61,541 nt of DNA from Octopus sinensis (lineage: Eukaryota). The position numbers and the translations under genes were made by a program. The stretch's first letter is position 1. Every line of letters starts with the position of its first letter. The stretch covers positions 1 to 61,541 of the forward strand of contig NW_021832259.1 of NCBI RefSeq assembly GCF_006345805.1, in the 5' to 3' direction. This document shows positions 1-48,016 of the stretch, piece after piece. Under the pieces are notes generated by a model that was not told the origin of the DNA, searched no databases, and saw only the letters and a program-made list of their open reading frames with translations.

Positions 1-39
<39 letters not shown>

Positions 40-40
40 C

Positions 41-268
41 GGCGGCGAGCTGGCAGAATTGTTAGCACGCCGGGCGAAATGCTTAGCGGTATTTCGTCTG
101 TGTTACGTTCTGAGTTCGAATTCCGCCGAGGTCGACTTGGCCTTTCATCCTTTCGGGGTCAATAAATTAAGTACCAGCTTCGCACTGGGGTCGATGTAAT
201 CGACTTAATCCGTTTGTCTGTTCTTGTTTGTCCCCTTTATGTTTAGCCCCTTGTTGGCAATAAAGAAA
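41..268 (+). mobile_element. tRNA-derived SINE, family 1 (ggcggcgagctggcagaat... head)
   Basis: A-box-like TGGCAGAATTG and B-box-like GAGTTCGAATTCC, then a conserved body and A-rich end; many related copies in the window. Confidence 0.85.
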
Positions 269-454
269 AAATATATATATACATATATATATATGCCTGT
301 GTTTGTGTGTGTGTGTGTATTGGGGGTAGTGGACCGAAAAGCAATGTGGCATTTCATGTAATAAGCTCAAATCAGCATAAAACATATCGTAAATATATGT
401 ATTCATTCAAAATATTATCGCCATTGTTAGCAATAACATTTTCCCACTTCGAAA

Positions 455-890
455 GGCCAGTCATTTAGATCGATCCCAATACACAAGTGGCACTTAATTC
501 ATCGACTCCGAAAGGATGAAAGGCAAAGTCGACCTCTGCGGAATTTGAACTCAGAACGTAAAGACAGACGAAATAGCTATTTCATTACTACCCACAAGGG
601 GCTAAACATAGAGGGGATTAACAAGGACAGACAAAGGGATTAAGTCGATTGTATCGACCCCAGTGCATAACTGGTACTTAATTTATCGACCCCGAAAGGA
701 TGAAAGGCAAAGACAATCTCGGCGGAATTTGAACTCAGAACATAAAGACAGACGTGCGAAGCATTTCGCCCGGCGTGCTATCGTTTCGGTCAGCTCACCA
801 CTTTATTTTGTACCTTTGAACGTAACGGCAGACGAAATACGGCTAAGCATTTCGCCCGGCGTGCTAAGGTTTCTACCAACTCGCCGCCTT
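455..890 (-). mobile_element. SINE family 1, tandem partial copies
   Basis: Reverse complement of the family-1 body repeated about twice, plus head fragments. Confidence 0.8.
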
Positions 891-1125: not shown

Positions 1126-1340
1126 GCAGTACCGGACTTCAACAGCGGTTATTTTTTTTAATTGGCTAATTTTGAATTTTGCAGTTTGATTGTAGTTTGC
1201 CGCGCAGCTGCTTTCTTTCGGTTTTTGTGACGTACACGTCGCACGGTACCAGTTTCAGCATGACTGTGCTAGTGTACAAGTAACCCTCTCACAGATACGT
1301 GTTTATTTGTGTGAATTTATTATAATCTTCATTCGTAACC

Positions 1341-17165: not shown

Positions 17166-17580
17166 TTCGTATACATATATATGACAATTTTCCAAGGACA
17201 ATGGTTTAAAATCAAACTTGTTTTATTTTATTTATTTATTTTTTTTTTAGTTTCAGCACAGAGCTGCGGCCATGCTGATGCCACCGCCGTTTTATATTTA
17301 TTCTTTTATTATATTTATTCTTTATTATATTTATTTTTTTTTAATTTTTTACATGCATGCATATATAATACATATGTATATTACACATGCTCATATGTGC
17401 ATGCATGTACATATACACTAATATACATAACACACAGCACATAACACAGCTACACTCATAATATACATCTACACATACGTACATACATATCAAACAATGT
17501 ACGCTCGTACGGTTATATATAACTGTATATATGTATTTTAGTACCATGCATTTCAGCATTTATGCATGGATTACTACATG

Positions 17581-17613
<33 letters not shown>

Positions 17614-17616
<3 letters not shown>

Positions 17617-20600
17617 GGTTTTAGAATGGTACTCCTGAGTGGAATCTGGATGTTACCCCATTCGGATTTTCGGTTAAGAGTGGGTTTGTATTCTTGTATA
17701 CAGACAGATTTAGTGACCTGTCTCAGCATTGCATCAGAGGGATGTGTGGATAAGATGTTTAACTTAAGTCTCACTAAGGAGCCCTTGTGCACCTACAGCA
17801 TGCTGATAGAAGATGAGTTTGGTTTCTTTTCAATGTAGTTGTCCAGGTGTTCTTTGAACCTATCATTGATACTCCTAGAAGTTTCACCTATGTATGACTC
17901 TGGGTTAGTCTCGCAAGCTCCTTCTTGGCACAGTGCTCTGGCATAGTTGTGCAATCCTTCTTGGCACAGTGTTCTTGGTTTTACAGTTCATATTGGGTTG
18001 TGGAACAACTGCACAATTATTTTGACGTGGGAATCTATCGAAAGGATATGATCTACATAATACAGATTGATAGTCCTACCTGTCTTTTCTACAACCTTGA
18101 TCTTAAGGCCAGTTATGTGTAGGATTTCCTTGAATGCCTTACATAATTCGTTCTTAGGTGTGGCATCAACAAACATTACACTAGGAAATCTCTTGTTATA
18201 CCAAGTATTGGTCTTATTCTTTTCTTGGTGTCCCTCTCTAACCTATTCCAGAACTTGTTGCGGTATAGGAACCATACACTGGTTTTCGTCATCACTTAGA
18301 ATGTGTTTGAATCTTGTTTTTTGTTCCTTTGTACACTCTGATTCTGTCATATTGTGTGTATCCGGGGCGTTGCATTCGGAATATGAATTGTTGGATGTGT
18401 TGTCGTTCTTGTGGTTGGCATAGTGGAGATATACATTCCTCATTAATCTAACTAAGTCTGCCACCAGGATGTTGAGCTTGTTAGTACTCGACATCGTTGA
18501 GTTACTACGGATTACCAGTGGATTAGCCATAGGTTTACAAGAGTGTGAGTAGAGTAAACAGGATTTAACAGTTCCGTTAACCATAGTATTTTCTATCCAC
18601 AGCTCAGTATCTAGGACAGGTAATCTGTTACTGGGGTGTTTAGAGGGGCAGTCTACGGTAACTTTTATACTGCTATGGATAGAGTTAGCCATGTGTTGTA
18701 TAGCTGTCATCACCTGTTCTTCATTTAGTAGAGATTCTATCTCTGTGTCTGTATTATTATTACATTTCACGACAATGTTATGTCGTCAATGCATCGAGAG
18801 TACATAGCTAAGTGGCTGTTACAGGTCGCTAGGCACTGTTTAAACTGTCTGTCCCACCATGCAATGAAGAGGTTTGCAACATCACCGACGATCCCTACTC
18901 CAATAGCACCACTTTCGTCTGTTTATACAGTTTTTGTTAAACTTAAAAATATGGGTTTTAAGTATAGTTCTAAGGCTGACACCGATAGCATGTGCAATAG
19001 TAGTTCTGATGTCGTGTGGATCTGAAGGTGAGTAGTCTGCCTCATCCAAACCTGTCAGCGTTCACATTGGGTCTTTTTGTATGTTGAGGTAATGGTAGGT
19101 GGTCTTCCTCGTTTGTTACAGGTAGGACAAGCATATAGAAGATTATTGTGTGACAGATACTCATTGGTACAAGTCAGAGCCAGGAAGAACCCTAGTTCAT
19201 ATATGTCCACATTTTTAAATCATATTGCTCTCACTAATTATCTTTATACATTTTTCGACAGCAAAGTATATGTCAATGGAAGGATATAGTGATACCACAT
19301 CCATGATACCTACGATGTGGTCTCTGAGGTCACACGTGTTGTTGCATTCGCGGATCCTGCTAAGGAGGTCTTCAGTACTATCACGTAAATCTGCAGATAA
19401 CTCTATTAAGGGTCGTATGAATGTGAGAGAAAATATGATATTTGTGGTTGTTTGCATTGTTGGTACCACAAACTGGTCGGGTAGGTGGCCAAGTATACGA
19501 TCCATGTGGATCTTATGATCTTTTCGAAGGCCATATAGGGGTGGGATTTCATTGTTGGTAGTTATGAAATTGTTCGCTGTGCATTTCTCAGAGTGGAGAA
19601 TGATACTCCACATCCCCATGTGAGCATTGAGGACTTTTCGTTTTCAATGTACTCGAGTGTTGTTGTTTTGTTATTGTTGTGTGATGTGTGGTTGCATGTT
19701 CGAAATGTAATTAGATAAGTTGTCAAACAGACATTCTAACTGATTTGTCAGTCGGGAAGCATACATCTCTCTATTTTTGATACGATTTTTAATGTTAAGG
19801 CCTTTCTTAATTTTGGTGTCAAGATCATGGGTCTTATTTTTGTTTGTTGGTGTTTATGCCTTTGGGTGTAATTAGAGAAAGCTGACAGGAGAGTTTGGAT
19901 TTAGTAAGGGTAAACTTTGCTTCTAAAGCAGCGTCTGCGTAGGGGGGGCATGCATACTGTTTTGTTGAATGGTAAGTTGGTAGGGCAGACCCTTTTCATG
20001 TCAAACGACATATGTCACGTTTGTCATAGAAACGACGTATGGAATGGGTATTGCCAGATATGTCATGAATGTCAGGATTTTGGTTGCGGTTAAAGTGTGT
20101 TCTCCATCTAAGTTTGTAAAGCTTTTCTCAATGTCTGATAGTATTGATATCTTGCTAACCTTATTATATGTGGTGAACTTTGGAGTGAGTTCTAGGGCAG
20201 CGAGTCATCTGTATCCAGTTGTACTCCTCCGTACACTCGTACGTTTCTTGTTAGTTGGTCATCATCTACGGGTTTGTCATTCATAGAAATTCCATCAATC
20301 GATTCAGTCATGTCAAACTGTTTAGTTGTTGGGTGGTTGTATGGTAGTTGTAACGTCCATGCTAGTTTCTTTTCAAAGTGTTGTACGCACCTGTCTCATA
20401 TGGAGTTACATTCACGACGAGTAGTAGTTCTTTTATTGTTTCATTTCTTGATTATTAAGTAAGTTCTTCACTTTAGCGAGGGCCTCTCGCTTTTCATTTT
20501 CTTTAGTGGCTAGGTGTATATATAGTTTGGACTTCAGGTTCATAATTACGATATGTTTTAGTTTCGACACTTGTCCTTTCATCAGGTTTAGTGTTTCGAC

Positions 20601-20700
20601 CATTTTGTAAATCCTTTTTGGGTAAACCTTCAGTGAGATGCAGTGTCTAATGAAATGAAATGAAGCTGTTGCTAGCTGTTATTTTTCTCAAGCAACAAGT
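17614..20700 (-). mobile_element. Penelope-like element (RT and GIY-YIG), degenerate
   Basis: PPLYGLRKDHK, DVVSLYPSID, GIVGDVANLF, YSRCIDD, LPVLDTELW and C-terminal YIGETSRSINDRFKEH...PTLNRKSEWG. Confidence 0.88.
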
Positions 20701-20846
20701 AACGGCTTTCCTGAGAGCCTGGCTCAATCTTTCGAATTACGGAGAAGTACTTGCATAGCGAGTGACTTGATCTGAGCATGGAAGGTGCTTATAAGCCATT
20801 TAAGAAACACACAAAAACTGTTAGATTCACTTTAACATTGATTTAA

Positions 20847-20895
20847 TTGGCAAAATATTTTCGTCGCTTTGAGACTGCGACTTCTTCACTGACAA
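20847..20895 (-). ncRNA. Degenerate or variant minimal hammerhead-like motif upstream of the Penelope ORF
   Basis: Minus strand: ttgtca-GTGAAGA-a-gtcgc/gcgac-GAAA-(palindrome aaaatatttt)-tgccaa; core C3 is replaced by G. Confidence 0.35.
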
Positions 20896-21239
20896 AATTT
20901 GTGCTGCATCTGAGAAAGTAACAGTTAGTTCATGATATATATGTGTGTATGTATGTATGTGTATGTATGTATGTATGTATGTATTTATGTATGATGTATG
21001 TATGTATGTATGTATGTGCGTATGCATGTATATGTGTACATGTATGTGCACATTCATGTGTGCATGCTATACACATGTATGTATGTACTTATGTACTTAC
21101 GTATGTGAGTATTTAGGAGAAATAGACGTGTCAGTGTGTGTGTACATGTGTATGTACTTGTGAATGTATGTTTATGTAATATGTGTCAGTTCAATTTGTA
21201 TACTTGACTGTTACCTTGTCACTCGCTATGCAAGTACAT

Positions 21240-30571: not shown

Positions 30572-30659
30572 AAACTGAAATGCGAAAAGTTTATTTGTTA
30601 GTTGTCTGGAACGGTTTAAAGACCACTACATCCCATCGGATTGACTCCAAAATTTACGG

Positions 30660-31398
30660 TTCGTGAGCAATCATTCTCACAGAAATGCGTGCACAAACAG
30701 ACACAGAATGTCATGGTTTAAAGGTCAACATGTTTAAAACATAAATAGCTACGAGTTTGCGTATATGCATGTATCTATGTGCATGAGTGCGGACGTGTGT
30801 TTTCAGAATGTCACAGTTTTAAGCTCAACATATTTAAAACAAATAGGTACGAGATTGCGTCTTTGCATGTATCTATATTCGTGGGTGCGGACGTGTGAGT
30901 GTTTGTGCGTGTGTGAGCACAGTCCACCTATACCCAAGGTGGTTGCATTGTCTTATAAGAACCGGCCGTGAAAGTTACGGACCACATTAATGAACTCATT
31001 TGCATACAAACAATTAGGGCTCACCTTGAAATTGCGCGGTTAACAAACAGTAGTGTCTGAATGGGAATTAGCTTGCTTACCTAACAAATGTTTCCGAGTT
31101 CAGTCCCACTGGGTGGCATGTTGGGAAAATGTCTTCTACTATAGTCTCAGGCCGGCCAAAGCCTTCTGAGTGGATTTGGGAGACGGAAACTAAAAGAAGA
31201 CTGTCGTATATATATATATATATATGTAGCAGTAAGAGTGGCTGTGGTATGTAGCTTCCTTTCCAAACACGGTGTTTCTGGTTCAGTCGAACTACTTGGT
31301 CCATAGGCAAGTGTCTTCCAATATAGCCTCGGACAGACCAACGTTTCTGAGTAGATTTGGTATACGGAAACAGAAAGTAGCCCGTCGTATATAGATAG

Positions 31399-31441
<43 letters not shown>

Positions 31442-31450
31442 ATATATATA

Positions 31451-31491
<41 letters not shown>

Positions 31492-33279
31492 TATACATAG
31501 GTATATATTGACAGATATATGTATATACACATAGATATTTAAACATATATGGGATGGCCATAATGGGACATCCGACCCACTAGAGAGAGCAGTTAAACTC
31601 CAATAAATCGTAAAAGTCTGTCATGTTCGAATAATATATTCGAAAGTTACTTCCTCTTGCTCATTATAATTTATTAAAAGTAATATAATTATATGTAAGG
31701 AAAGTAACTCTGGAAGATGTTATCTAGTTATCTCCCTTCCGAGAGTTAATTGCCCCGCGTATTAACTTTTTATTGTAAACTTATAATATTCAAGGGAAGT
31801 AACTGTAGAAGATACTTTGTAGTTATCTCCCTTATGTAGTTATCGTAATATAGACTTTGTCGCTCGTAGACTCTTTCAGTTATTTCACTGTGACCATGGT
31901 GGAGCACCGCCTCTAGTCAAGCAAATCAACCCCAGGAATTATTCTTTGTATGCCTATTACTTAATGTATAGGTCTCTTTTGCAGAACCGATAAGTTACGG
32001 GGACGTAATGTTCGATGTACTGATTTAGTAGGTATTTATTTATTGTAATAATTTCAATTATCATAAATTATGGGCTAGGAAAAATACTAGAAACTTTTTT
32101 GATAGACCTATTGGGGCTCCTTGTGTGTGTGGGACTGTTTTTATTTATGTGAGTGTTGGTATTTTCATTTCAGTGTTTGTGTGTGAGTGTTTTTATTTCT
32201 GTGTGCGCGAGTGTGTGAGCGACTGAGTGTTTCTATTTGTTTGTGTGAGCGACTGAGTGTTTCTATTTGTTTGTGTGTGTGCGACACTTACAACTACAAC
32301 AAACACATTGACCATTTCTAAGATACCCACATTTGAAATCACAAATACTAAATCAAAATAAGTTCAATTATTGCACCTTTAGTGACTTGAGATGTTGTTA
32401 TTTTTCCCATGTGTCGTCAATGTATTAATTTCACAAGTGGACGATAGAAATTCTCATACTGGCGTGGAGGGAGATGATATTCTAACTGCGAGTGCAAAGC
32501 ACCCAATGCCCCTTTACATTCTTAATAAATTGTATGTTTGTGCTAGTTAGGGTTAGGGTTTTATGTGTGAATGTGTAACTGCGTTTTCATTTCTGTGTGT
32601 GGGTGCGTATGTTTGTGTGTGACTATTTTCATTTCTATTTGTGTGTGTGCATGGGTAGGTATGTAACTGTTTTCATTTCAGTGTTTGTGTTTGTGTGAAT
32701 GTTTTTATTTCTGTGTATACGTGTGTGTGAGCGTCTGTTTGTATGCGACAATTACAGCTACAACAAACACTTTAAACATCTCTAAGATACCCACATTTGC
32801 AGATCCCCAAGTTCTAAATGAAAAGAAGTTCGATTTATTGCACCTTTAGCGACTTCAGATTTGCGAGTGTTAATCACCCCGTATCTACATACCTGGATCG
32901 GCCATAATTGGCCTCATTCGGAGATCTATCGGGTGTGGAATATTTATGGCTATAGAAGTTAACTTGTTACAGGTTTTGTTTATGGCTTAACTTTTGTAGA
33001 TTTTGGGAAGTCCATAGATGTTACTGGCTTTGCAGTGAAATCTAGTCAAGCAATTTGTCTCCTTTTTGGTTAAACCGTGTTGGAACTGGTGGATAAGAGT
33101 AGACAGTTTGGTCATTATCTTCGATTGACTGTAGTTGTTGATGCTTTTAACCGATACAGGTGTGTTTGACTCCCTGTATTTTAGCGGTTCGGCAAAAGAG
33201 AACAAGTTACAATAAATACTAGGCTTACAAAGAATATGTGCTGCGGACGATGTGATCGATTATTAAAGGCGGCGCTCCA

Positions 33280-33366
<87 letters not shown>

Positions 33367-33900: not shown

Positions 33901-36079
33901 TGTATATAAAAGTACGTAGTCGCACACACAGAAATGGAAATACACAGATCTAACCCAGTTCATATTCCTTTGGCATTTAAACTTAAATATAAAAATGAAT
34001 CTCAAACCAAGGAAAGTAACTCCCTCTACATCCCTACTTGACAAGAGTTACATCCGTTGATTGATACTAATACAATTTAACATTAGATACGTAAATAGTG
34101 TTTGAATAATAATAGGCTGGAATGGATTAGGGTTAGGTTTAGGTTTAGAAGACAATTGGACAAGATGAGAGGCAGTGGGAATGAAACTGAAACCATGTGG
34201 TTCGTAGGTAAACTACTTACCACAGCCATTCCTGCGACAATATTCATATATATGACGGGCTTCTTTCAGTTTCCCTCTACCAACCCTACTCAGAATACAT
34301 TGGTCGGCCCGGGGGTATAGTTGAATACACTTGCCGAAGGTGCCACGCTGTTGGATTGAACCCAGCACATTGAGGTTGGTGAGCAAACACTCTCACACAC
34401 ATGCGCGAGCGCAAACAGACACAGAGATGAAAGCACACATATTGGCTGACCCACACGCTCATACAATTTCTTGAGAGTGTCACGGTTTTAAGGTCAACAT
34501 ATTTAAAACATGAAATAGCTTTGCATGTATCTATGTGCATGAGTGCGGAAGTGTGGGTATTTGTGCGTGTGTGAGCACAGTCCACACATACCCAAGGTGG
34601 TCGCATCGGCTAATGTGACCCAACCGTGAAAGTCTGTTTCACCCAGACATACACATACAGATATACGTGTATATACCCACGCACGTATATGTAGTGTTTA
34701 AAACAAAAAAGAAACTGTAAGGGATGGAACGGGAGTTCTTTCCGTTTTATTAAGAAAACTTGCATCTGTATATGTGATAGTACATGCGTGCATTCTCGTG
34801 TGCCCTTCGAGTGCGAACAAACACACACACACGCACACATTTAAACATATATACGATGGTATTTATTCAGTTTCCTTCCACTAGATCCAATCACAAGGAT
34901 TAGGTCGGCCTTGGGGTACAGTAGTAGACAATTGCATAAGATGACAGGCAGTGGGAGTGAACACCAAACCATGTGATTCGCAAGCGAACTACTTACAACA
35001 TAGCCATTGCTACGCCGATATTCATATATACGACGGGCTTCTTTCAGTTTCCCTCTACCAACTGCACTCAGAATACTTTGGTCGGCCCAAGGCTATAGTT
35101 GAATACACTTACCGAAGGTGCAACGCTGTTGGTTTGAACTCATCGCATTGCGTTTCGTAAGCAATCATTCTCACAGAAATGCGCGCGCAAACAGACACAG
35201 AATGTCACGGTTTAAAGGTCAACATGTTTAAAACATAAATAGCTACGAGTTTGCGTATATGCATGTCTCTATGTGCATGAGTGCGGACGTGTGTTTCCAG
35301 AATGTCGCAGTTTTAAGCTCAACATATTTAAAACATAAATAGGTACGAGATTGCGTCTTTGCATGTATCTATATTCGTGGGTTCGGACGTGTAGGTGTTT
35401 GTGCGTGTGTGAGCACAGACCACCTATACCCAAGCTGGTTGCATTGTCTTATGGGAACCAGCCGTGAAAGTTCCGGACCCCATTAATGAACTCATTTGCA
35501 TACAAACAATTAGGGCTCACCTTGAAATTGTCCGGTTAACAAACAGTAGTGTCTGAATGGGAATTAGCTTGCTTACCTAACAAATGTTTCCGAGTTCAGT
35601 CCCACTGGGTGGCATGTTGGGAAAATGTCTTCTACTATAGTCTCAGTCCGGCCAAAGCCTTCCGAGTGGATTTGGGAGACGGAAACTAAAAGAAGACTGT
35701 CGTATATATATATATGTAGCAGTAAGAGTGGCTGTGGTATGTAGCTTCCTTTCCAAACACGGTGATTCTGGTCAGTCCAACTACGTGGACCCATGGGCAA
35801 GTCTCTTCCAATATAGCTTCGGACAGACCAACATTTCTGAGTAGATTTGGTATACGGAAACAGAAAGTAGCCCGTCGTATATAGATAGGTGTATATATAT
35901 ATGTATATAATATGTATACCAATTAAGGACTGAACACGAAAAGGTGGACAGTCAACATGCTAGATATAGACGTCAAATCGCCATTCTCCACAAAGATTTT
36001 GTTCTCAAATAAAAATAAAATTCAGCACGACCTAAAGCAATGGATGAGACAAAAGAAAAATACTAAATGGAATAATTAC

Positions 36080-36139
36080 CTACGTACTGCAGTTTCAGCT
36101 ATTAATATCACAAGGATATCTGTAACTTCATCAGCGTAG
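36080..36139 (-). ncRNA. Minimal type-I hammerhead ribozyme (unit 1)
   Basis: Reverse complement is CTACG-CTGATGA-AGTTA..TAGCT-GAAA-C-TGCA-G-TA-CGTAG. Confidence 0.88.
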
Positions 36140-36586
36140 TTTGTTATGAGCATAATATGCTGTACTAGATGAAAAACGGTACCGGAGTCCCGCATGCAAA
36201 AAGTACAACCTATTACGTTCGGATGTATCTTTCGAATGCCTCTACTTTTGGCGCGCTGATAATCGAAAAACTAGCCTGCAGTTAATAAATTAGCAGCAGT
36301 CAATTTATCGGTTTGAGAACATATATTTCATATTTAAAAATTAAGGGTAGAAATTGATATTAGTCAATTAAAACCAGTGGTCTAGCACATTAAAAAGAAT
36401 CCGAAGATTAAAATATTTATATATACCAATTAAGGACTGAACACGAAAAGGTGGACAGTCAACATGCTAGATATAGACGTCAAATCGCCATTCTCCACAA
36501 AGATTTTGTTCTCAAATAAAAATAAAATTCAGCACGACCTAAAGCAATGGATGAGACAAAAGAAAAATACTAAATGGAATAATTAC

Positions 36587-36646
36587 CTACGTACTGCAGT
36601 TTCAGCTATTAATATCACAAGGATATCTGTAACTTCATCAGCGTAG
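36587..36646 (-). ncRNA. Minimal type-I hammerhead ribozyme (unit 2)
   Basis: Same 60-nt motif. Confidence 0.88.
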
Positions 36647-37094
36647 TTGTTGTTATGAGCATAATATGCTGTACTAGATGAAAAACGGTACCGGAGTCCC
36701 GCATGCAAAAAGTACAACCTATTACGTTCGGATGTATCTTCGAATGCCTCTACTTTTGGCGCGCTGATAATCAAAAAACTAGCCTGCAGTTAATAAATTA
36801 GCAGCAGTCAATTTATCGGTTTGAGAACATATATTTCATATTTAAAAATTAAGGGTAGAAATTGATATTAGTCAATTAAAACCAGTGGTCTAGCACATTA
36901 AAAAGAATCCGAAGATTAAAATATTTATATATACCAATTAAGGACTGAACACAAAAAGGTGGACAGTCAACATGCTAGATATAGACGTCAAATCGCCATT
37001 CTCCACAAAGATTTTGTTCTCAAATAAAAATAAAATTCAGCACGACCTAAAGCAATGGATGAGACAAAAGAAAAATACTAAATGGAATAATTAC

Positions 37095-37154
37095 CTACGT
37101 ACTGCAGTTTCAGCTATTAATATCACAAGGATATCTGTAACTTCATCAGCGTAG
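37095..37154 (-). ncRNA. Minimal type-I hammerhead ribozyme (unit 3)
   Basis: Same 60-nt motif. Confidence 0.88.
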
Positions 37155-37607
37155 TTTGTTATGAGCATAATATGCTGTACTAGATGAAAAACGGTACCGG
37201 AGTCCCGCATGCAAAAAGTACAACCTATTACGTTCGGATGTATCTTTCGAATGCCTCTACTTTTGGCGCGCTGATAATCGAAAAACTAGCCTGCAGTTAA
37301 TAATAGCAGCAGTCAATTTATCGGTTTGAGAACATATATTTCATATTAAAAATATTTAAAAATTAAGGGTAGTAGAATTGATATTAGTCAATTAAAACCA
37401 GTGGTCTAGCACATTAAAAAGAATCCGAAGATTAAAATATTTATATATACAATTAAGGACTGAACACGAAAAGGGGACAGTCAACATGCTAGATATAGAC
37501 GTCAAATCGCCATTCTCCACAAAGATTTTGTTCTCAAATAAAAATAAAATTCAGCACGACCTAAAGCAATGGATGAGACAAAAGAAAAATACTAAATGGA
37601 ATAATAC

Positions 37608-37667
37608 CTACGTACTGCAGTTTCAGCTATTAATATCACAAGGATATCTGTAACTTCATCAGCGTAG
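37608..37667 (-). ncRNA. Minimal type-I hammerhead ribozyme (unit 4)
   Basis: Same 60-nt motif. Confidence 0.88.
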
Positions 37668-38115
37668 TTTGTTATGAGCATAATATGCTGTACTAGATGA
37701 AAAACGGTACCGGAGTCCCGCATGCAAAAAGTACAACCTATTACGTTCGGATGTATCTTTCGAATGCCTCTACTTTTGGCGCGCTGATAATCGAAAAACT
37801 AGCCTGCAGTTAATAAATTAGCAGCAGTCACAATTATCGGTTTGAGAACATATATTTCATATTTAAAAATTAAGGGTAGAAATTGATATTAGTCAATTAA
37901 AACCAGTGGTCTAGCACATTAAAAAGAATCCGAAGATAAAAATATTATTTATATACAATTAAGGACTGAACACGAAAAGGTGGACAGTCAACATGCTAGA
38001 TATAGACGTCAAATCGCCATTCTCCACAAAGATTTTGTTCTCAAATAAAAATAAAATTCAGCACGACCTAAAGCAATGGATGAGACAAAAGAAAAATACT
38101 AAATGGAATAATTAC

Positions 38116-38175
38116 CTACGTACTGCAGTTTCAGCTATTAATATCACAAGGATATCTGTAACTTCATCAGCGTAG
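38116..38175 (-). ncRNA. Minimal type-I hammerhead ribozyme (unit 5)
   Basis: Same 60-nt motif. Confidence 0.88.
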
Positions 38176-38811
38176 TTTGTTATGAGCATAATATGCTGTA
38201 CTAGATGAAAAACGGTACCGGAGTCCCGCATGCAAAAAGTACAACCTATTACGTTCGGATGTATCTTTCGAATGCCTCTACTTTTGGCGCGCTGATAATC
38301 GAAAAACTAGCCTGCAGTTAATAAATTAGCAGCAGTCAATCAGGTTTGAGAACATATATTTCATATTTAAAAATTAAGGGTAGAAATTGATATTAGTCAA
38401 TAAAACCAGTGGTCTAGCACATTAAAAAGAATCCGAAGATTAAAATATTTATATATACCAATTAAGGACTGAACACGAAAAGGTGGACAGTCAACATGCT
38501 AGATATAGACGTCAAATCGCCATTCTCCACAAAGATTTTGTTCTCAAATAAAAATAAAATTCAGCACGACCTAAAGCAATGGATGAGACAAAAGAAAAAT
38601 ACTACCCTTAATTTTTAAATATGAAATATATGTTCTCAAACCGATAAATTGACTGCTGCTAATTTATTAACTGCAGGCTAGTTTTTCGATTATCAGCGCG
38701 CCAAAAGTAGAGGCATTCGAAAGATACATCCGAACGTAATAGTTGTACTTTTTGCATGCGGGACTCCGGTACCGTTTTTCATCTAGTACAGCATATTATG
38801 CTCATAACAAA

Positions 38812-38871
38812 CTACGCTGATGAAGTTACAGATATCCTTGTGATATTAATAGCTGAAACTGCAGTACGTAG
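38812..38871 (+). ncRNA. Minimal type-I hammerhead ribozyme (inverted unit 1)
   Basis: Stem I 38812-16/38867-71; CUGAUGA 38817-23; stem II 38824-54; GAAA 38855-58; GUA cleavage triplet 38864-66. Confidence 0.9.
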
Positions 38872-39315
38872 GTAATATTCCATTTAGTATTTTTCTTTTG
38901 TCTCATCCATTGCTTTAGGTCGTGCTGAATTTTATTTTTATTTGAGAACAAAATCTTTGTGGAGAATGGCGATTTGACGTCTATATCTAGCATGTTGACT
39001 GTCCACCTTTTCGTGTTCAGTCCTTAATTGGTATATATAAATATTTTAATCTTCGGATTCTTTTAATGTGCTAGACCACTGGTTTTAATTGACTAATATC
39101 AATTTCTACCCTTAATTTTTAAATATGAAATATATGTTCTCAAACCGATAAATTGACTGCTGCTAATTTATTAACTGCAGGCTAGTTTTTCGATTATCAG
39201 CGCGCCAAAAGTAGAGGCATTCGAAAGATACATCCGAACGTAATAGGTTGTACTTTTTGCATGCGGGACTCCGGTACCGTTTTTCATCTAGTACAAATAT
39301 TATGCTCATAACAAA

Positions 39316-39375
39316 CTACGCTGATGAAGTTACAGATATCCTTGTGATATTAATAGCTGAAACTGCAGTACGTAG
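39316..39375 (+). ncRNA. Minimal type-I hammerhead ribozyme (inverted unit 2)
   Basis: Same motif; predicted cleavage after position 39370. Confidence 0.9.
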
Positions 39376-39485
39376 GTAATTATTCCATTTAGTATTTTTC
39401 TTTTGTCTCATCCATTGCTTTAGGTCGTGCTGAATTTTATTTTTATTTGAGAACAAAATCTTTGGTATATAATATGTATATATAT

Positions 39486-39520
<35 letters not shown>

Positions 39521-40150
39521 TATATATTGACAGATTTATGTATATACATTTAGATATTTAAACATATAACGGATGGCCATAATGGGACATCCGACTCATT
39601 AGAGAGCAGTTAAACTCCAATAAATCGTAAAAGTCTGTCATGTCTGAATAAATTTTCGAGAGTTATTTCCCCTGCATATTATAATTTAAATAAAAGTAGT
39701 ATAATTATATGTAAGGAAAGTAACTCTGGAAGATGTTATCTAGTTATCTCCCTTCGGAGAGTTAATTTCCCTAACTAATCTTTTATTATTGTTATATTTT
39801 AATACTTAAGGGAAGTAACTGTAGAAGATACTTTGTAGTTATTTCCCTTAAGTATGTAGTTATCGTAATATAGACTTTGTCGCTCGTAGACTCTTTCAGT
39901 TATTTCACTGTGACCATGGTGGAGCACCGCCTTTAGTGAAGCAAATCAACATCAGCAATTGTTCTTTGTATGCCTATTACTTAACGTATAGGTCTCATTT
40001 GCAGAAACGATAAGTTACGTGGATGTAATGTTCGATTTACTGATTTAGTAGGTATTTATTTACTGTAAGAACTTCAATTATCATAAATTATGGGCTAGGA
40101 AAAATACTAGAAACTATTTTGATATACTTATTGTGTGTGGTACATTTCAG

Positions 40151-40186
<36 letters not shown>

Positions 40187-41494
40187 AGTGCTTTTTTTTC
40201 TGTGTGCGCGAGTGTGTGAGCGACTGAGTGTTTCTATTTGTTTGTGTGTGTGCGACACTTACAAATGCAGCAAGCACTTTGACCATTTCTAAGATACCCA
40301 CATTTGAGATCACTAACTACTAAATCAAAATAAGTTCAATTTATTGCACCTTTAGTGACTTGAGATGTTGCTCATATTTTTCCCATGTGTCGACAATGTA
40401 TTAATTTCACAAGTGGACGAAAGAAATTCTCATACTGGCGTGGAGGGAGATGATATTCTAACTGCGAGTGCAAAGCACCCAATGCCCCTTTACATTCTGA
40501 ATAAATTGTATGTTTGTGCTAGTTAGGGTTAGGGTTTTATGTGTGAGTGTGTAACTGCGTTTTCATTTGTGTGTGTGGGTGCGTGTGTGTGTGTGTGTGT
40601 GTGTGTTTGTGCGTATGTTAGTGTGTGAGAGTTTGGATGTGTTACCGTATTTTCCATTTCTATTTGTGTGTGTCTGTGTTTGTGCATGTGTAGGTATGTA
40701 ACTGTTTTCATTTCTGTGTTTGTCCGCGTGTTTGAGTGTGTGAATATGTAGCTGTATTTTCATTTGTGTTTGTCTTTGTGCGTATGTGAGTGTTTTTGTG
40801 AGAATTTTTTTTTCAGTGTTTATGTGCGTGGGACTTTTTATATGTGTGTGTGTATTGGTATTTTCATTTCAGTGTTTGTTTTTATGTGAATGTTTTTATT
40901 TCTGTGTGTACGTGTGTGTAAGCGACTGTTTTTATTCGTTTGTGTGTGTGCGACAATTACAGCTACAACAAACACTTTAAGCATCTCTAAGATACCCACA
41001 TTTGCAGATCCCTAAGTTCTAAATGAAAAGAAGTTCAATTTATTGCACCTTTAGCGAATTCAGATTTGCGAGTGTTAAGCACCCAATGCCTCCCGTATCT
41101 ACATACCTGGATTGGCCATAATTGGCCTCATTCGGATATCTCTCGGGTGTGGAATATTTATGACTATAGAAGTTAACTTGTTACAGGTTTTGTTTATGGC
41201 TCAACATTTGTAGATTTTGGGAAGTTCACAGATGTTACTGGCTTTGCAGTGAAATCTAGTCAAGCAATTTGTCTCCTTTTTTGTTAAACCGTGTTGGAAC
41301 TGGTGGATAAGAGTAGACAGTTTGGTCATTATCTTCGATTGACTGTAGTTGTTGATGCTTTTAACCGATACAGGTGTGTTTTACTCCCTGTATTTTAGCG
41401 GTTCCGCAAAAGTGAACATGTTAAAATAAATACTAGGCTTACAAAGAAGTGCTGCGGACGATGTGATCGATTAAAGGCGGCGCGCTCTAGTATC

Positions 41495-41546
<52 letters not shown>

Positions 41547-42207
41547 CTTACAGATATACGTGTATATACCTACATACGCATATATACTATATAAAACAAA
41601 AAAGGAAACTTGATTATGTCATCATTACATATATTACTTTATTACAGATATTACAACATGACACGTATTATATGACGTTAGAGAAGTAACTCAAGGAGAT
41701 ATTTTCTGCTATCTCCCCAGTGAACAGGTCATGAACTTTACTCGTTATTTACTCTTTTACTCTCATTCACTTGTTTCAGTCATTTGACTGTGGCCATGTT
41801 GGAGCAAGACCTTTAGTCGAGCATATCGACCCCAGGACTTATTCATTGTAGGCCTAGTGCTTATTCTATCAGTCTCTTTCGCTGAACCTCTATGTTATGG
41901 GGACGTAAACAGACTAGCAACCGTTGTGTAGCAATGTTTGGGGACAAACAGACATACACGCACACACACACACACACACGTACACATATATAAACATATA
42001 TATGACTGCATTTTTCCAGTTTCCTTCCACCATATCCAATCACAAGGCATTGGTCGGCTCGGGTCTATAGTAGATTTTTCAAACGATGCTGGTGTGTGGT
42101 TTTCCTCCTGTATTTCAGCGGCTCGGCAGAAGAGAATAAGTTAAAATAAATACTAGGCTTAGAAAGAATAAGTGCTGCTGACGATGTGCTCGAAGAAGAT
42201 TGATTGG

Positions 42208-42949: not shown

Positions 42950-43480
42950 TCCAATACATGTGTTGGTGTACGTGAAACTGTTTTTATTCGTGTGTGAGTG
43001 TCGGTTTTCATTTCAGTGTTTGTGTGATTGTTTTTATTTCTGTGTGTATGTGCCTATGTGCGTTTTTATTCGTTTGTGTGTGTGCGATATTTTCAGCTAC
43101 AACAAACACTCTAAGCATCTCCAAGATACCCACATTTGCAAATCACTAGCTGCTAAATGAAAAGAAGTTCAATTTATTGCGACTTCAGATTTGCGATTGT
43201 TAAGCACCCAATGCTCCCTGTATTTACATACCTAGTACTGGCTTTGCAGTGAAATCTAGTCAAGCAATTTGTCTCCTTTTTTGTTAAATCTTGTTGGAAA
43301 TGGTGGATAAGAGTAGACAGTTTGGTCATTATCTTCGATTGACTGTAGTTGTTAATGTTTTAACCGATGTTTTACTCCCTGTATTTTAGCGGTTCGGCGA
43401 AAGAGAACAAGTTAGAATAAATACTATGCTTACAACGAAAGTGCTGCGGACGATGTGCTCGACTAAAGGCAGCGCTTCAG

Positions 43481-43541
<61 letters not shown>

Positions 43542-44180
43542 ATTACATACATATTTACATAGATATACGTGTATATACCCACATACGCATATATACTATC
43601 TAAAACAAAAGAGAAACTTGATTATGTCATTATTACTTTATTACAGATATAACATGAAACGTATTATATGACGTTAGAGAAGTAACTCAAGGAGATATTT
43701 TCTGCTATCTCCCTAGTGAACAGGTCATAGACTTTTCTCGTTATTTACTCTTTTACTCTCATTTACTTGTTTCAGTCATTTGACATTGGCCATGTTGCAG
43801 CACCACCTTTAGTCGAGCATATCGACCCCAGGACTTATTCTTTGTAGGCCTAGTACTTATTCTATCAGTCTCTTTCGCTGAACCTCTAAGTTATGGGGAC
43901 GTAAACAGACTAGCATCCGTTGTGTAGCAATGTTTGGGGACAAACAGACACACGCACACATATATAAACATATATATGACTGGAGTTTTCCAGTTTCCTT
44001 CCACCAAATCCAATCACAAGGCTTTGGTCGGCTTGGGGCTATAGTAGATTTTTCAAATGATGCTGGTGTGTTTTCCTCCCTGTATTTCAGCGGCTCGGCA
44101 GAAAAGAATATGTTAGAATAAATACTAGGCTTAGAAAGAATAAGTGCTGCTGACGATGTGCTCGGAAGAAGATAGATTGG
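42950..44180 (+). repeat. Third diverged copy of the duplicated block (matches ~40850-42210)
   Basis: Shared modules: cagctacaacaaacact...gatacccacatttgc, ttgattatgtcatt, and SINE junctions. Confidence 0.8.
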
Positions 44181-44229: not shown

Positions 44230-45970
44230 TAAACTTAGATAGAATTAGATATGTTTCGACCAAAGATTGGTCGAGGCCATGTCTAACTTAATAGCACCAC
44301 CTGATAGGATTATTCGAATCCTGTTAAGTCAAGTTTTGTTCAAGTAGTGAGTTCTTGTTGGGTGAGTTGTATCCAATTATGGGTGGCTTATCTGGTATTC
44401 TTTGAAGGAATCTATCCAGACTCTGTTTAAACTTGATGGGATCCTTTTCCTCTTTGATCTCTCTCGGGACAATGTTAAATAGGGCAGGGCCTTGTGAGAA
44501 AAGAAATTATGTTGCAGTGTACATGTATGTTGTGATCTTGTATTGGGCAGGGGACGTATAGCCCGTGGTCCAAGTCTTGGATGAACCTGAAGCTAATGTT
44601 TAGGTCGTTTGGGCATAGTTGGCGGCATATTTTCCACATCGTACAAATGATGTACCGCTCACGGCAACGCTGGAGGGAGTAAAATTTCAAGGCTTTAAGG
44701 CGATCCCAATAATCGAGAGCAGCCAGTTTAGTGAGTGCCCGCTGGGGTGACTCAATTCTGGAGATGTTTTGTCTTGTGTGAGGAGACCACAGTGGGCAGC
44801 AGTATTCAAGGTGTGGCCGTACAAAGGAGGAAAAAAGTGGTATGATGACACCTTGTTCCCTGGACCGGAAAGTTCTTAAGATCCAGGAACTCATCCTACG
44901 AGCTATATCGACCTTCTTGTTGATGTGTGCACTCCAACTGAGATCGTCATCAACAATTACACCCAGGTCTCTGACATTGTTAGAAGCTGTGAGCGGTTCC
45001 TCTGAAGGACGAGAGTATGGCTGTTTTAGTGAGGAGTTTCTTCCAAAATGCATCAGCTCAAATTTTCCTCGTTCAGTTGCATTTTGTTTCTTGTTGCCCA
45101 TTCACTCACAGCATATAGATGAGACTGGAGTTGAGTTCGGTCTGCTTCTTCATTGACGATTTGGTGGAGCTTGGTGTCATCAGCAAATATTTTCACTTTG
45201 CAGTAATGTACGACACTGGAAAGGTCGTTTATGTTGATTATGAAGAGTAGCGGACCCAAGACAGTCCCCTGGGGGACACCGCTGGTGACTTTTGCTGGGC
45301 TTGAGTGGACTCCATCAACTACAACATGTGTTCTATTCGCCAGGAAATACTTAATCCAGTGTAGAACTTTTCCACGGATTCCAACGTTTGCCAATTTTGA
45401 GAGTAGGATGTTATGGCCTACCCTGTCGAACGCTTTACTGAAGTGAAGATATATGACGTCAGAGTTCGAACCTGTTCCCAAGGCTTTGAGTACATCTTCA
45501 ATGTGGTGTAAGAGCTGTATTAGACAGTCCCTGCCACAGCGAAAGCCATGCTGATTTGCATTTAGGAGTTTCTGAGTCTCCAGGAAGTCAGCCATCCTTG
45601 ATCTTAACACTCTTTCAAACACCTTGATGATGTGGGAGGTGAGTGAGATTGGGCGATAGTTGAGTGCGAGGGATCTGTTTCCCTGTTTGAAAACCGGGAT
45701 GACTGACTGGGATAGAAACTGTTTTGGTATATAACGAATTTCTCTAGAGGTTGGTCAGTGGGACTGCAAGTTGGTGTTTACATTCCTTCAGGAGACTAGC
45801 GGGGAATCTATCAGGGCCTACAGCAGAGTAGTATTTGAGCCCATTTATTGCTGCTACGATGTCAGTGGGAGTGAAGGTTATGTCTGCAATTTTGTGTTGG
45901 GAGTCAACTTCATTCGCTTCTCTTACGTCAATATCAGTGGGAACACTAAAGACAGCAGTATTGTTTCTGC
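44230..45970 (-). mobile_element. CR1-clade LINE ORF2 3' part (RT)
   Basis: NYRPISLTS, NQHGFR, IYL.FSKAFDRV, SGVPQGTVLGPLLF, KIFADDTKL, VRDLGV, RPHLEYCC and YSLQR.RER. Confidence 0.92.
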
Positions 45971-46582: not shown

Positions 46583-46775
46583 TGGGTTAGGGGTTGGGTA
46601 AGGGTTAGGGTTGGGGTAGGGGTTAGGGTTGGGGTAGGGGATAGGGTTAGGGTTTAGGTTAGGGTTTAGGGTTAGGGTTGGGTTAGGGTTGGGTTAGGGT
46701 TAGGGTTTAGGGTTACGTTTAGGGGTTAGGGTTTAGGGTTAGGGGTTAGGGTTTAGGGTTAGGGTGAGGGTTAGT
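46583..46775 (+). repeat. Degenerate telomeric array (TTAGGG/TTTAGGG/TTGGG)n
   Basis: Seen directly; followed by three 18-bp gtctcgggaattggtggg-like units and a further ggttagggg patch at ~46970-46995. Confidence 0.85.
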
Positions 46776-47937
46776 CTCGGGAATTGGTGGGGTCTCGGGA
46801 ATTGGTGGGGTCTCCGGAATTGGGTGGGCACAGGAAGGGGTCTCGCTTGTCACAGGGATGAGGGGCTCACATGGTCAGGGGTTTGGGTTAGTCTCTAGAA
46901 GTGGGGGTCAACAGATGGGGTCTCGGGTGGTCACAGAAGTGGTCTCGGGGGGTCAGTGTTACAGAAGGGGTTCGGGTTAGGGGTTAGGGGTAGAGTTTCC
47001 ATTGAAATACTCTTTCTTTGCTTCAAATAATTTGAAAAATATAAAATTTCTGCTTATTTTTCATACATCACGAGAGTGTTTAAGGAATCCTTGTCGTTAT
47101 GGTGCCATATGTCAGAATTCCTAGGTTCCTACCGTTGTGCGGCAAACCAGAATTCGATTACATCGACCCCAGCGCGTAACTGGTACTTATTTAATCGACC
47201 CCGGTAGGACCCCTCGGCGGAATTTGAACTCACATTGTACCTTGATAACCTTGTACCAATATGTCTTGTTGAGAAATAATATAACACACGCACACACATA
47301 TAAACACACGCATGACAATACATAAAGACATTCTTTCTGTTTAATGTGTTTATATGTACATATACATAAGAATATGAACTCACTCGTGAATAGTGAATTG
47401 ATTTCAATCTTTCTAAATTAGAATTCAATAAAGGAAGCCATATACGAATCAATGTATAATAAACTATTGACACTCGCACTTGTCGCCAGTATAAATATAT
47501 AGACTGTGTTTTTTTATTATATATACATCGACACAATACACACACGTATGAGTATACATTCTGTTTCACTTTTTTGTTTCAGGAACATAAATTTTATTCA
47601 TTTTTCTTTGTTTTTTTAAAATCCATTATGTAATTTTACTCGGATTTATAAAGATATAAATAACAATGTCTTATAGTTTTCTTGTTTCTTAGCTATATTT
47701 TTTATATTTCTCTCTTGAAATAGTTTCTTTGTTATGTTTATAACAACACACATCTTTTATATTATTATTAATATTGTTACGGTTGTTGCATTTATTTCCT
47801 ATTGTTGCGTATTGCGCAGCTATTTTTTTAGGAGTTGATACAACTGAACTGAAAATTGATGACAAGTCTACCTGATGCTTTACGAATGGTTCAAATGCGA
47901 CCCAGAAACACGCAACATAAAATGCAGCTCTTGAAGA

Positions 47938-48016
47938 ACCCTTAACCCTAACCTTAAACACTAACCCTAAACACTTAACCTTAAACCCTAACCACAACCG
48001 TAACCCTAAACCCTAA
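47938..48016 (-). repeat. Degenerate (CCCTAA)n-like array in the opposite orientation
   Basis: ccttaaccctaaccttaaacactaaccctaa...aaccctaaaccctaa. Confidence 0.75.

What the first reader, a model, noticed from the sequence alone, without database searches (positions are those of the whole stretch)
35919..39464. Tandem ~507-bp units each encoding a minimal type-I hammerhead ribozyme: a candidate cephalopod retrozyme/circRNA system
Seen: all seven copies of this 60-nt segment read CUACG-CUGAUGA-[AGUUA cag AUAUC cuugu GAUAU uaa UAGCU]-GAAA-C-UGCA-G-UA|CGUAG on the ribozyme strand. The core is intact, with a 5-bp stem I and a two-part stem II. Helix III is a single C-G pair beside the conserved A-U pair, closed by a palindromic loop (CUGCAG), and the cleavage site is GUA. 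Established: this minimal type-I architecture with a palindromic helix III is typical of Penelope-like elements and of metazoan non-LTR retrozymes. In those systems adjacent ribozymes cleave as dimers and release monomer RNAs that circularise. Inference: a multimeric transcript would be processed into ~507-nt linear and circular monomers. That is longer than the animal retrozyme monomers I recall (roughly 150-450 nt), and I know of no description of this particular unit. The recurring 60-aa ORF lies antisense to the ribozyme and is probably incidental.
Basis: partly seen in the sequence, partly recalled or inferred. Interest (0 to 1): 0.95.

Follow-up and report, generated by a model that had tools for sequence, protein, structure and literature searches.

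The report
Hammerhead-ribozyme repeat inserted in octopus-like genome
A 3.5-kb block of ~507-bp repeats, each carrying an intact-looking minimal hammerhead ribozyme motif, was inserted into a TA microsatellite of an octopus-like genome in the way Penelope-like retroelements insert; it is a new member of the known animal "retrozyme" class, not a new kind of system.

Summary
The 60-nt motif occurs exactly seven times and nowhere else in the window, spaced 503-513 bp apart. It has a complete hammerhead core, a 5-bp stem I, a two-part stem II and an 8-nt palindrome (ACUGCAGU) at helix III.

One correction: the array is not a simple tandem. Five ribozymes lie on the minus strand (35919-38604). Two lie on the plus strand in a head-to-head inverted arm (38605-39464).

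A paralogous segment in the same window is an empty site. It shows that the whole 3546-bp block is an insertion into a (TA)n microsatellite, flanked by a 16-nt direct repeat. Tandem copies, an inverted 5'-truncated copy and a (TA)n target are the published footprint of Penelope-like element (PLE) integration.

The unit has 34% GC and no conserved ORF. Its ribozyme strand folds better than shuffles (z = -4.2). A PLE remnant lies in the window, and the best protein matches are to Octopus vulgaris.

Caveats:
- Rfam hammerhead models do not detect the motif.
- The 10.1-11.1 pair is A-U, not G-C.
- The seven copies are identical, so there is no covariation.
- No homologous units could be retrieved.
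- Cleavage and circles are untested.

A ~507-nt monomer is within the known range.

Verdict: new member of a known kind; moderate interest.

The parts
35919..39464 (.). Whole inserted block (3546 bp) of ~507-bp hammerhead-bearing units, about 7 unit lengths in two arms
   Evidence: Unit homology and spacing. It is absent from the paralogous empty site.
35919..38604 (-). Sense arm. In unit coordinates (1 = C1.1 after the cleavage site) it reads [20..507] + 4 full units + [1..166]. It holds 5 ribozymes and its 3' end is at 35919.
   Evidence: Alignment of units; motif positions.
38605..39464 (+). Inverted, 5'-truncated arm. It reads [~244..507] + [1..504] + [1..94], holds 2 ribozymes and has its 3' end at 39464.
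   Evidence: Inverted repeats I1-I25; alignment.
38602..38604 (.). Head-to-head junction of the two arms, with 3-nt microhomology (CTA) shared by both arms
   Evidence: Read from the sequence against the unit consensus.
36080..36139 (-). Hammerhead motif copy 1; predicted cleavage between 36085 (A17) and 36084 (C1.1)
36587..36646 (-). Hammerhead motif copy 2; predicted cleavage 36592|36591
37095..37154 (-). Hammerhead motif copy 3; predicted cleavage 37100|37099
37608..37667 (-). Hammerhead motif copy 4; predicted cleavage 37613|37612
38116..38175 (-). Hammerhead motif copy 5; predicted cleavage 38121|38120
38812..38871 (+). Hammerhead motif copy 6 (inverted arm); predicted cleavage 38866|38867
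39316..39375 (+). Hammerhead motif copy 7 (inverted arm); predicted cleavage 39370|39371
35903..35918 (.). Left copy of the 16-nt flanking direct repeat GTATATAATATGTATA (probable target-site duplication)
   Evidence: The repeat abuts the block exactly; shifting the boundaries by 1-4 nt destroys it.
39465..39480 (.). Right copy of the 16-nt flanking direct repeat
31400..31500 (.). Empty site: an imperfect (TA)n microsatellite in the paralogous segment 30654-33338. That segment is colinear with both flanks of the block.
   Evidence: Left flank 35148-35918 matches 30654-31429 at 94%. Right flank 39518-40248 matches 31499-32247 at 87%, with further colinear blocks as far as 41546/33338. Alignments.
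35957..36139 (+). Recurring 60-aa ORF antisense to the ribozyme, present intact in 4 units; judged incidental
   Evidence: No exact copy, no homologue and no Pfam family.
17574..21047 (-). Degenerate Penelope-like element remnant (RT, then C-terminal GIY-YIG, plus a pLTR-like piece at 20779-21047). It is context, not part of the array: it shows PLEs in this genome.
   Evidence: Frame-1 translation. Weak GIY-YIG hit, E = 1e-3. Homologues are 700-870 aa; two of five scanned gave one weak sub-threshold Pfam hit each, to RVT_1 in one and to a C-terminal GIY-YIG in another. 83.7% nucleotide identity over 3.2 kb to O. vulgaris OX597820.1. No similarity to the 507-bp unit and no hammerhead core found.

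Best explanation
The block is a young insertion of a non-autonomous, non-coding retroelement of the animal non-LTR retrozyme / PLE-associated hammerhead-repeat class, in an octopus-like cephalopod genome. Each ~507-bp unit carries one minimal type-I hammerhead.

Proposed mechanism:
1. Unit-internal transcription of the ribozyme strand gives multimeric RNA (inferred).
2. A lone motif has only a 2-bp helix III and is predicted to misfold. The 8-nt palindrome ACUGCAGU of two neighbouring motifs pairs to build a double hammerhead (fold prediction shown; activity inferred).
3. [quoted passage not shown]
4. A host RtcB-type ligase circularises them (inferred from PMC7229834).
5. A PLE reverse transcriptase and GIY-YIG endonuclease nicks a (TA)n target and copies a circular or multimeric template. 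This yields a multimeric cDNA, with a second inverted cDNA primed from the other nick. The result is the observed tandem arm, the inverted 5'-truncated arm and the 16-nt duplication. The footprint is shown; the enzyme is inferred.
For: - Motif: the full core is present (C3 U4 G5 A6 U7 G8 A9, G12 A13 A14, A15.1-U16.1, A17). Watson-Crick pairs adjoin the core in all three helices, in 7 of 7 copies and nowhere else in the window. The chance rate is about 5e-4 per unit.
- Dimer model: the monomer MFE keeps stems I and II but not the active helix III (-12.7 against -5.3 kcal/mol for the hammerhead fold). Cofolding two copies forms the 8-bp intermolecular helix III, at -37.5 against 2 x -14.3 kcal/mol. 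This matches published dimer-dependent type-I and PLE hammerheads.
- Structured RNA: the ribozyme-strand monomer has MFE z = -4.2 linear and -4.1 circular. The antisense strand gives -1.8 and -2.1.
- Mobility: there is an empty-site paralogue in the same window. A 16-nt exact repeat abuts both ends; the null in TA-rich tracts is 1.5% for non-pure-TA repeats and 7% overall. Unit copies differ by only about 20 small events over 3.5 kb, while the flanking paralogues differ by 5-13%, so the insertion is younger than the duplication.
- PLE footprint: partial tandems, an adjacent inverted 5'-truncated copy and a (TA)n target bias are described for PLEs in PMC8557442. All three are seen here. One end also carries a 72-nt extension relative to the other, reminiscent of the one-sided PLE 'tail'.
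- Retrozyme traits: GC is 34%. There is no conserved ORF. No LTR is present, and PBS/PPT motifs were not searched for. The flanking repeat is longer than 4 bp.
- PLEs exist in this genome.
Against: - Rfam hammerhead covariance models give no hit, even at E<=10 on a 96-nt slice.
- The 10.1-11.1 pair is A-U. PLE minimal hammerheads characteristically have a bulged nucleotide followed by G10.1-C11.1.
- Nearest-neighbour folding offers alternative pairings that sequester the core.
- All copies are identical in the motif. With about 20 variant events, zero in the motif is expected about 8% of the time, so there is no conservation or covariation signal.
- No homologous unit could be retrieved from any reachable collection.
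- The PLE remnant in the window shares no sequence with the unit and shows no hammerhead.
- PLE-type minimal hammerheads cleave poorly in vitro.
- The head-to-head layout means no single transcript carries all seven ribozymes in sense.
- No promoter has been identified.
Confidence: 0.72

Rival explanations
1. PLE-derived or satellite-like repeat whose hammerhead motif is a relic or has a role other than producing circles. The DNA architecture is real, but the RNA is not efficiently cleaved or circularised, so there is no retrozyme life cycle.
For: Metazoan PLE minimal hammerheads showed low or undetectable cleavage in vitro, and their role is called unknown. The 10.1-11.1 pair is atypical (A-U), stem II is long and interrupted, and no loop-loop tertiary contacts can be recognised. 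Rfam gives no hit. There is no expression evidence.
Against: The core is perfect and the palindromic helix III favours dimer formation. The ribozyme strand is specifically more structured than shuffles. The multimeric insertion is what a rolling-circle or multimer template would give.
Confidence: 0.2
2. Ordinary tandem repeat in which a hammerhead-like string arose by chance.
For: Seven identical copies are a single evolutionary instance. A relaxed descriptor is expected to hit on the order of a thousand times by chance in a genome of a few gigabases (rate). There is no covariation.
Against: The chance rate per unit is about 5e-4 for a much weaker descriptor than the observed motif. The motif sits in a repeat that also shows the independent PLE-type insertion footprint and strand-specific excess structure.
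Confidence: 0.04
3. The inverted arm (38605-39464) is an assembly artefact, such as a fold-back chimeric long read, and the true locus is a simple tandem array.
For: Differences between units are mostly 1-nt indels typical of long-read error. PLE-type structures are known to trouble assemblies.
Against: The inverted arm carries its own variants. It abuts the right copy of the 16-nt repeat and then continues colinearly with the paralogue for about 2 kb. The junction has a 3-nt microhomology, as expected of a biological joint.
Confidence: 0.04

Closest known systems
Metazoan non-LTR retrozymes (coral, mussel, axolotl; Cervera & de la Pena 2020, PMC7229834)
   Same: Tandem low-GC non-coding units, each with a type-I hammerhead. 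The weak palindromic helix III implies dimer-dependent cleavage, as in axolotl. The monomer is predicted to be highly self-paired. The flanking duplication is longer than 4 bp.
   Different: The ribozyme is of the minimal PLE type: 5-bp stem I, a long interrupted stem II and no recognisable loop 1/loop 2 contacts. It is not the canonical 6-bp/4-bp type. At ~507 nt the monomer exceeds the 170-400 nt circles studied there. The host is a cephalopod. RNA forms have not been examined.
Minimal hammerheads in pseudo-LTRs of Penelope-like elements (Cervera & de la Pena 2014, PMC4209133; Craig et al. 2021, PMC8557442)
   Same: Short stem I, long stem II and a small palindromic helix III. The insertion architecture is shared: partial tandems, an inverted 5'-truncated copy and a (TA)n target.
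   Different: The unit contains no RT/GIY-YIG ORF, so it is non-autonomous. The 10.1-11.1 pair is A-U rather than a bulged nucleotide plus G-C. There is no detectable sequence similarity to the PLE remnant in the window.
pDo500 satellite of Dolichopoda cave crickets (PMC2837043)
   Same: Repeat unit of about 500 bp with one embedded hammerhead. Multimeric transcripts are processed to monomers, and a double-hammerhead model has been proposed.
   Different: pDo500 is an abundant, slowly evolving satellite with demonstrated cleavage and compensatory changes across 12 species. Here only one 7-unit insertion is in hand, and it carries a clear transposition footprint.
Vertebrate non-LTR retrozymes as non-autonomous PLE derivatives (Li, Clavereau & Pollet 2026, bioRxiv 10.64898/2026.07.22.740005)
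   Same: Tandem hammerhead repeats co-occur with PLEs. Consensus lengths are 51-972 bp, and most families have at most 7 repeat units.
   Different: That link rests on co-occurrence and pLTR phylogeny in vertebrates. Here the link rests on the integration footprint at a single invertebrate locus.

Membership tests
Hammerhead ribozyme, type I | Conserved core C3 U4 G5 A6 N7 G8 A9 / G12 A13 A14 / A15.1-U16.1 / H17 | tested here: met
   All positions are present in 7 of 7 copies, with cleavage triplet GUA. The criteria are those of PMC3088659.
Hammerhead ribozyme, type I | Three helices with standard pairs directly adjoining the core; helix I open, helices II and III closed | tested here: met
   C1.1-G2.1, A10.1-U11.1 and A15.1-U16.1 all pair. 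Stem I is 5 bp, stem II is 5 + 5 bp and helix III is 2 bp plus a UGCA loop.
Hammerhead ribozyme, type I | Match to a curated Rfam hammerhead covariance model | tested here: not met
   No hit at gathering score, none at E<=10 on 3.8 kb, and none at E<=10 on a 96-nt slice. The likely reason is the 31-nt stem II and the minimal helix III, but that was not tested.
Hammerhead ribozyme, type I | Covariation or conservation of stems and core among homologues | tested here: inconclusive
   The seven copies are identical. Zero of about 20 variant events fall in the motif, P about 0.08. No homologues were retrievable.
Hammerhead ribozyme, type I | Site-specific self-cleavage | not testable with these tools
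   Needs in-vitro transcription of monomer and dimer constructs.
PLE-type minimal hammerhead (PMC4209133) | Short stem I (4-5 bp), enlarged stem II, and a palindromic 15.2-16.2 pair and loop 3 | tested here: met
   Stem I is 5 bp, stem II has 10-11 pairs, and ACUGCAGU is an 8-nt palindrome.
PLE-type minimal hammerhead (PMC4209133) | Extra nucleotide between A9 and 10.1, followed by a G10.1-C11.1 pair | tested here: not met
   The sequence reads A9-A-G...C-U-G12. The extra A is matched by a U, giving A10.1-U11.1 then G-C.
Metazoan non-LTR retrozyme (PMC7229834) | [quoted passage not shown] | tested here: met
   Units of 503-513 bp. GC is 34%. The ORFs have no homologues. There are no terminal direct repeats other than the units themselves. 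PBS and PPT motifs were not searched for.
Metazoan non-LTR retrozyme (PMC7229834) | Evidence of transposition, with a target-site duplication longer than 4 bp when present | tested here: met
   Empty-site paralogue plus a 16-nt flanking repeat. Caveat: the target is a microsatellite, and the null probability is 1.5-7%.
Metazoan non-LTR retrozyme (PMC7229834) | Predicted stable, self-paired monomer RNA | tested here: met
   z = -4.2 linear and -4.1 circular on the ribozyme strand; 58% of bases paired.
Metazoan non-LTR retrozyme (PMC7229834) | Expression as linear and circular monomer RNA | not testable with these tools
   No transcriptome search was possible. The protein-based route to transcript contigs found nothing.
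Penelope-like element (autonomous) | ORF encoding a reverse transcriptase plus a GIY-YIG endonuclease | tested here: not met
   The unit has no ORF over 70 codons and no Pfam or homologue hits. The array is therefore at most a non-autonomous dependant.
Penelope-like element (insertion footprint, PMC8557442) | Partial tandems, an adjacent inverted 5'-truncated copy, and a microsatellite (TA)n target | tested here: met
   compared with the description.
Penelope-like element (derivation) | Sequence similarity of the unit to the pLTR or 3' end of an autonomous PLE of the same genome | tested here: inconclusive
   There is no similarity to the only PLE remnant in the window, nor to about 45 kb of O. 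vulgaris DNA around two PLE genes. The rest of the genome could not be searched.

The most novel reading that the evidence does not exclude
This is a recently active cephalopod retrozyme family that produces ~507-nt circular RNAs. On that reading, the locus preserves an unusually clean integration footprint: an empty-site paralogue, a 16-nt duplication, a five-unit arm and an inverted 1.7-unit arm joined by microhomology. That footprint would show directly that a multimeric cDNA, copied from a circular or multimeric retrozyme RNA, was installed by PLE-type double priming at a (TA)n target. It would be locus-level mechanistic evidence for the retrozyme-PLE dependency, which so far rests on co-occurrence and phylogeny. 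The head-to-head arms could also make read-through transcripts fold into an ~860-bp hairpin that feeds small-RNA silencing.
Probability: 0.35. Interest if true: 0.55.

Novelty: new member of a known kind. Interest (0 to 1): 0.38.

Why it matters
Hammerhead-bearing tandem repeats that make abundant circular RNAs are known from corals, mussels, insects, amphibians and fishes. I found no description of them in cephalopods in the paper library. This would extend the class to a lineage known for unusual RNA biology.

The locus also offers a rare filled-site/empty-site pair in which a retrozyme multimer shows the tandem-plus-inverted, (TA)n-targeted footprint of Penelope-like elements. That supports the current hypothesis that animal retrozymes are non-autonomous passengers of PLEs.

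It does not reveal a new kind of system. None of the RNA steps has been shown.

Tried and rejected
- Rfam: scanned at gathering score on the whole window, at E<=10 on 35800-39600, and at E<=10 on a 96-nt slice. No hammerhead or other ribozyme appeared on either strand; the only hit was a spurious snoRNA at E = 3.4.
- TRF missed the array because its maximum period is 500.
- Metagenome and viral collection scans with the core pattern gave 141 loci. All were chance matches, and none resembled the unit.
- Exact look-ups of the 60-aa ORF and nine other window ORFs were all absent from the collection.
- A homology search with all open segments of the unit in six frames gave no hit; Pfam gave none. 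The protein-coding reading is rejected, and this route to homologous units or transcripts is closed.
- A sensitive BLAST of the unit against the rest of the window found no solo copies or fragments.
- About 45 kb of O. vulgaris DNA around two PLE genes contained no unit copy.
- No hammerhead core was found in the PLE remnant or its O. vulgaris relative.
- ARAGORN found no tRNA-like part.
- Conservation of the motif within the array is not significant, P about 0.08.
- The claim that ~507 nt is longer than known monomers is rejected on the literature.

Full report
**Observation**

The pattern CTGATGA-N(20-45)-GAAACTGCAGTA occurs exactly seven times in the 61.5-kb window, against none in 100 shuffles. 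All seven 60-mers are identical: CTACG CTGATGA AGTTA-CAG-ATATC-CTTGT-GATAT-TAA-TAGCT GAAA C-TGCA-G TA CGTAG. Spacing is 503-513 bp. TRF missed the array only because its period limit is 500.

Five motifs are on the minus strand (36080-38175). Two are on the plus strand (38812-39375). The two arms are joined head to head at 38604/38605.

**Is it a hammerhead?**

By the criteria used in comparative surveys (core C3 U4 G5 A6 N7 G8 A9, G12 A13 A14, A15.1-U16.1, H17, and standard pairs next to the core in all three stems; PMC3088659), the motif qualifies:
- Stem I is 5 bp (CUACG/CGUAG, with C1.1-G2.1).
- Stem II is AGUUA/UAGCU plus AUAUC/GAUAU.
- Helix III is A-U and C-G closing UGCA.
- The cleavage triplet is GUA.

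A relaxed descriptor of my own finds nothing else on either strand of the window. It hit 9 times in 17.4 Mb of dinucleotide shuffles, about 5e-4 per 507-bp unit. About 140 chance matches to the core pattern in metagenome and viral collections were also checked. None combines a stem I of 5 bp or more with a terminal stem II of 4 bp or more.

Three points weigh against it:
- Rfam's hammerhead models give no hit at any threshold tried.
- The 10.1-11.1 pair is A-U. PLE minimal hammerheads typically have a bulged base followed by G-C.
- Nearest-neighbour folding finds competing pairings that involve core bases.

The short stem I, long stem II and small palindromic helix III are the traits reported for PLE-type minimal hammerheads.

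**Dimer model**

The isolated motif prefers a fold without the active helix III: -12.7 kcal/mol against -5.3 for the hammerhead fold. Two copies cofold with an 8-bp intermolecular ACUGCAGU helix III, at -37.5 against 2 x -14.3 kcal/mol. Dimer-dependent cleavage is documented for newt and axolotl retrozymes and proposed for PLE motifs. PLE minimal motifs cleaved only weakly in vitro.

**The unit as an RNA**

Cleavage-to-cleavage monomers are 507, 508, 513, 508 and 504 nt. GC is 34%. The ribozyme strand folds with z = -4.2 linear and -4.1 circular against dinucleotide shuffles. The antisense strand gives -1.8 and -2.1.

The 60-aa ORF is antisense to the ribozyme. It is absent from the protein collection. 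None of the unit's open segments in any frame has a homologue or a Pfam family. No tRNA-like or other Rfam element is present.

**It is an insertion**

The window contains a paralogous segment. The left flank 35148-35918 matches 30654-31429 at 94%. The right flank 39518-40248 matches 31499-32247 at 87%. Colinear blocks continue to 41546/33338.

In that paralogue the site is empty and consists of an imperfect (TA)n tract.

The block is bounded by an exact 16-nt direct repeat, GTATATAATATGTATA (35903-35918 and 39465-39480). The repeat disappears if the boundaries are shifted by 1-4 nt. Random position pairs in TA-rich tracts of the window give an abutting repeat of 16 nt or more in 7% of trials, and in 1.5% if pure TA repeats are excluded. 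It is therefore a probable target-site duplication, not a certain one.

Units differ by about 20 small events, mostly 1-nt indels. The flanking paralogues differ by 5-13%. The insertion is therefore younger than the duplication.

**Architecture**

Unit coordinates are numbered so that 1 is C1.1 after the cleavage site.
- The minus-strand arm reads [20..507], four full units, then [1..166].
- The plus-strand arm reads [~244..507], [1..504], then [1..94].
- Both outer ends are 3' ends of the ribozyme-sense strand, 166 and 94 nt past a cleavage site.
- The inner 5' ends meet at a 3-nt microhomology, CTA.

Partial tandems, an inverted 5'-truncated copy adjacent to the 5' end, a one-sided terminal extension and a (TA)n target bias are the published characteristics of PLE insertions (PMC8557442). 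Two cDNAs primed from the two nicks of one target on a multimeric or circular template would produce this layout. That step is inference.

**Genomic context and taxon**

A degenerate PLE lies at 17574-21047 on the minus strand.
- Its frame is nearly continuous from RT-like motifs to a GIY-YIG-like motif (Pfam GIY-YIG E = 1e-3).
- Its homologues are 700-870-aa proteins. Two of five scanned gave one weak sub-threshold Pfam hit each, one to RVT_1 and one to a C-terminal GIY-YIG.
- Named hits are Octopus vulgaris proteins. The remnant is 83.7% identical over 3.2 kb to O. vulgaris OX597820.1.

This supports a cephalopod (octopod-like) origin and the presence of PLEs. The remnant has no similarity to the unit and no hammerhead core, so it is not shown to be the partner.

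**Comparison with known systems**

The element fits the metazoan non-LTR retrozyme definition on every sequence-level criterion tested, but it has a PLE-type ribozyme rather than a canonical one.

A monomer of ~507 nt is not exceptional. pDo500 units are about 500 bp, and retrozyme consensus lengths of 51-972 bp are reported, with most families reaching at most seven units.

No paper in the library describes retrozymes in cephalopods.

**Verdict**

This is a real feature and a new member of a known kind. The sequence-level anatomy and the transposition footprint are shown. Cleavage, monomer release, circularisation and PLE dependence are inferred. Interest is moderate, 0.38.

Noticed in passing
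window 30654-33338 vs 35148-41546; also 41236-42200 vs 43236-44173: Segmental duplication of a repeat-rich segment at 87-95% identity. One copy carries the ribozyme array and the other is empty. A further partial copy lies at 88% identity.
   Followed up: partly
window 17574-21047 (-): Degenerate Penelope-like element: RT motifs, a weak GIY-YIG hit, several stops, and a pLTR-like piece at 20779-21047 that matches the 3' side of its O. vulgaris relative (L143 13881-14146). No hammerhead core was found.
   Followed up: partly
window 46584-46774 and 47937-48016: Interstitial telomere-type repeats in opposite orientation, (GGGTTA)~31 and (AACCCT)~12, bracket about 1.1 kb. They lie next to LINE-like RT ORFs at 44475-45622 (RVT_1 E = 8e-22).
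   Followed up: no
window 56110-60435 (+): Helitron-like Rep/PIF1-helicase ORFs (PIF1 E = 1e-38, Helitron_like_N) broken into several frames, in a region of about 50% GC that stands out from the 34-43% background.
   Followed up: no
window 3253-3788: 2.9 tandem copies of a 182-bp unit at 89% identity that looks like a SINE-type repeat.
   Followed up: no
window 5255-6777 (-) and 10645-13401: LINE-type remnants. One carries a weak, sub-threshold zf-RVT hit (E = 4e-4), and one ORF at 11745-12305 (-) matches RVT_1 (E = 1.5e-12). They are on opposite strands and are fragmented.
   Followed up: no
L142 (O. vulgaris OX597831.1) 1331-1400 (+): Solo hammerhead-like motif with the same architecture but an unrelated sequence: CTAG CTGATGA, a 43-nt stem II, GAAA, the palindrome ACCTAGGT and cleavage triplet GUC. 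It lies 8.6 kb from a PLE gene. It suggests that PLE-type minimal hammerheads are present in octopus genomes.
   Followed up: partly
L142 4997-5605 and 9136-9744: A 609-nt inverted repeat, 100% complementary, just upstream of a PLE gene in O. vulgaris. This may be another PLE-type inverted insertion structure.
   Followed up: no
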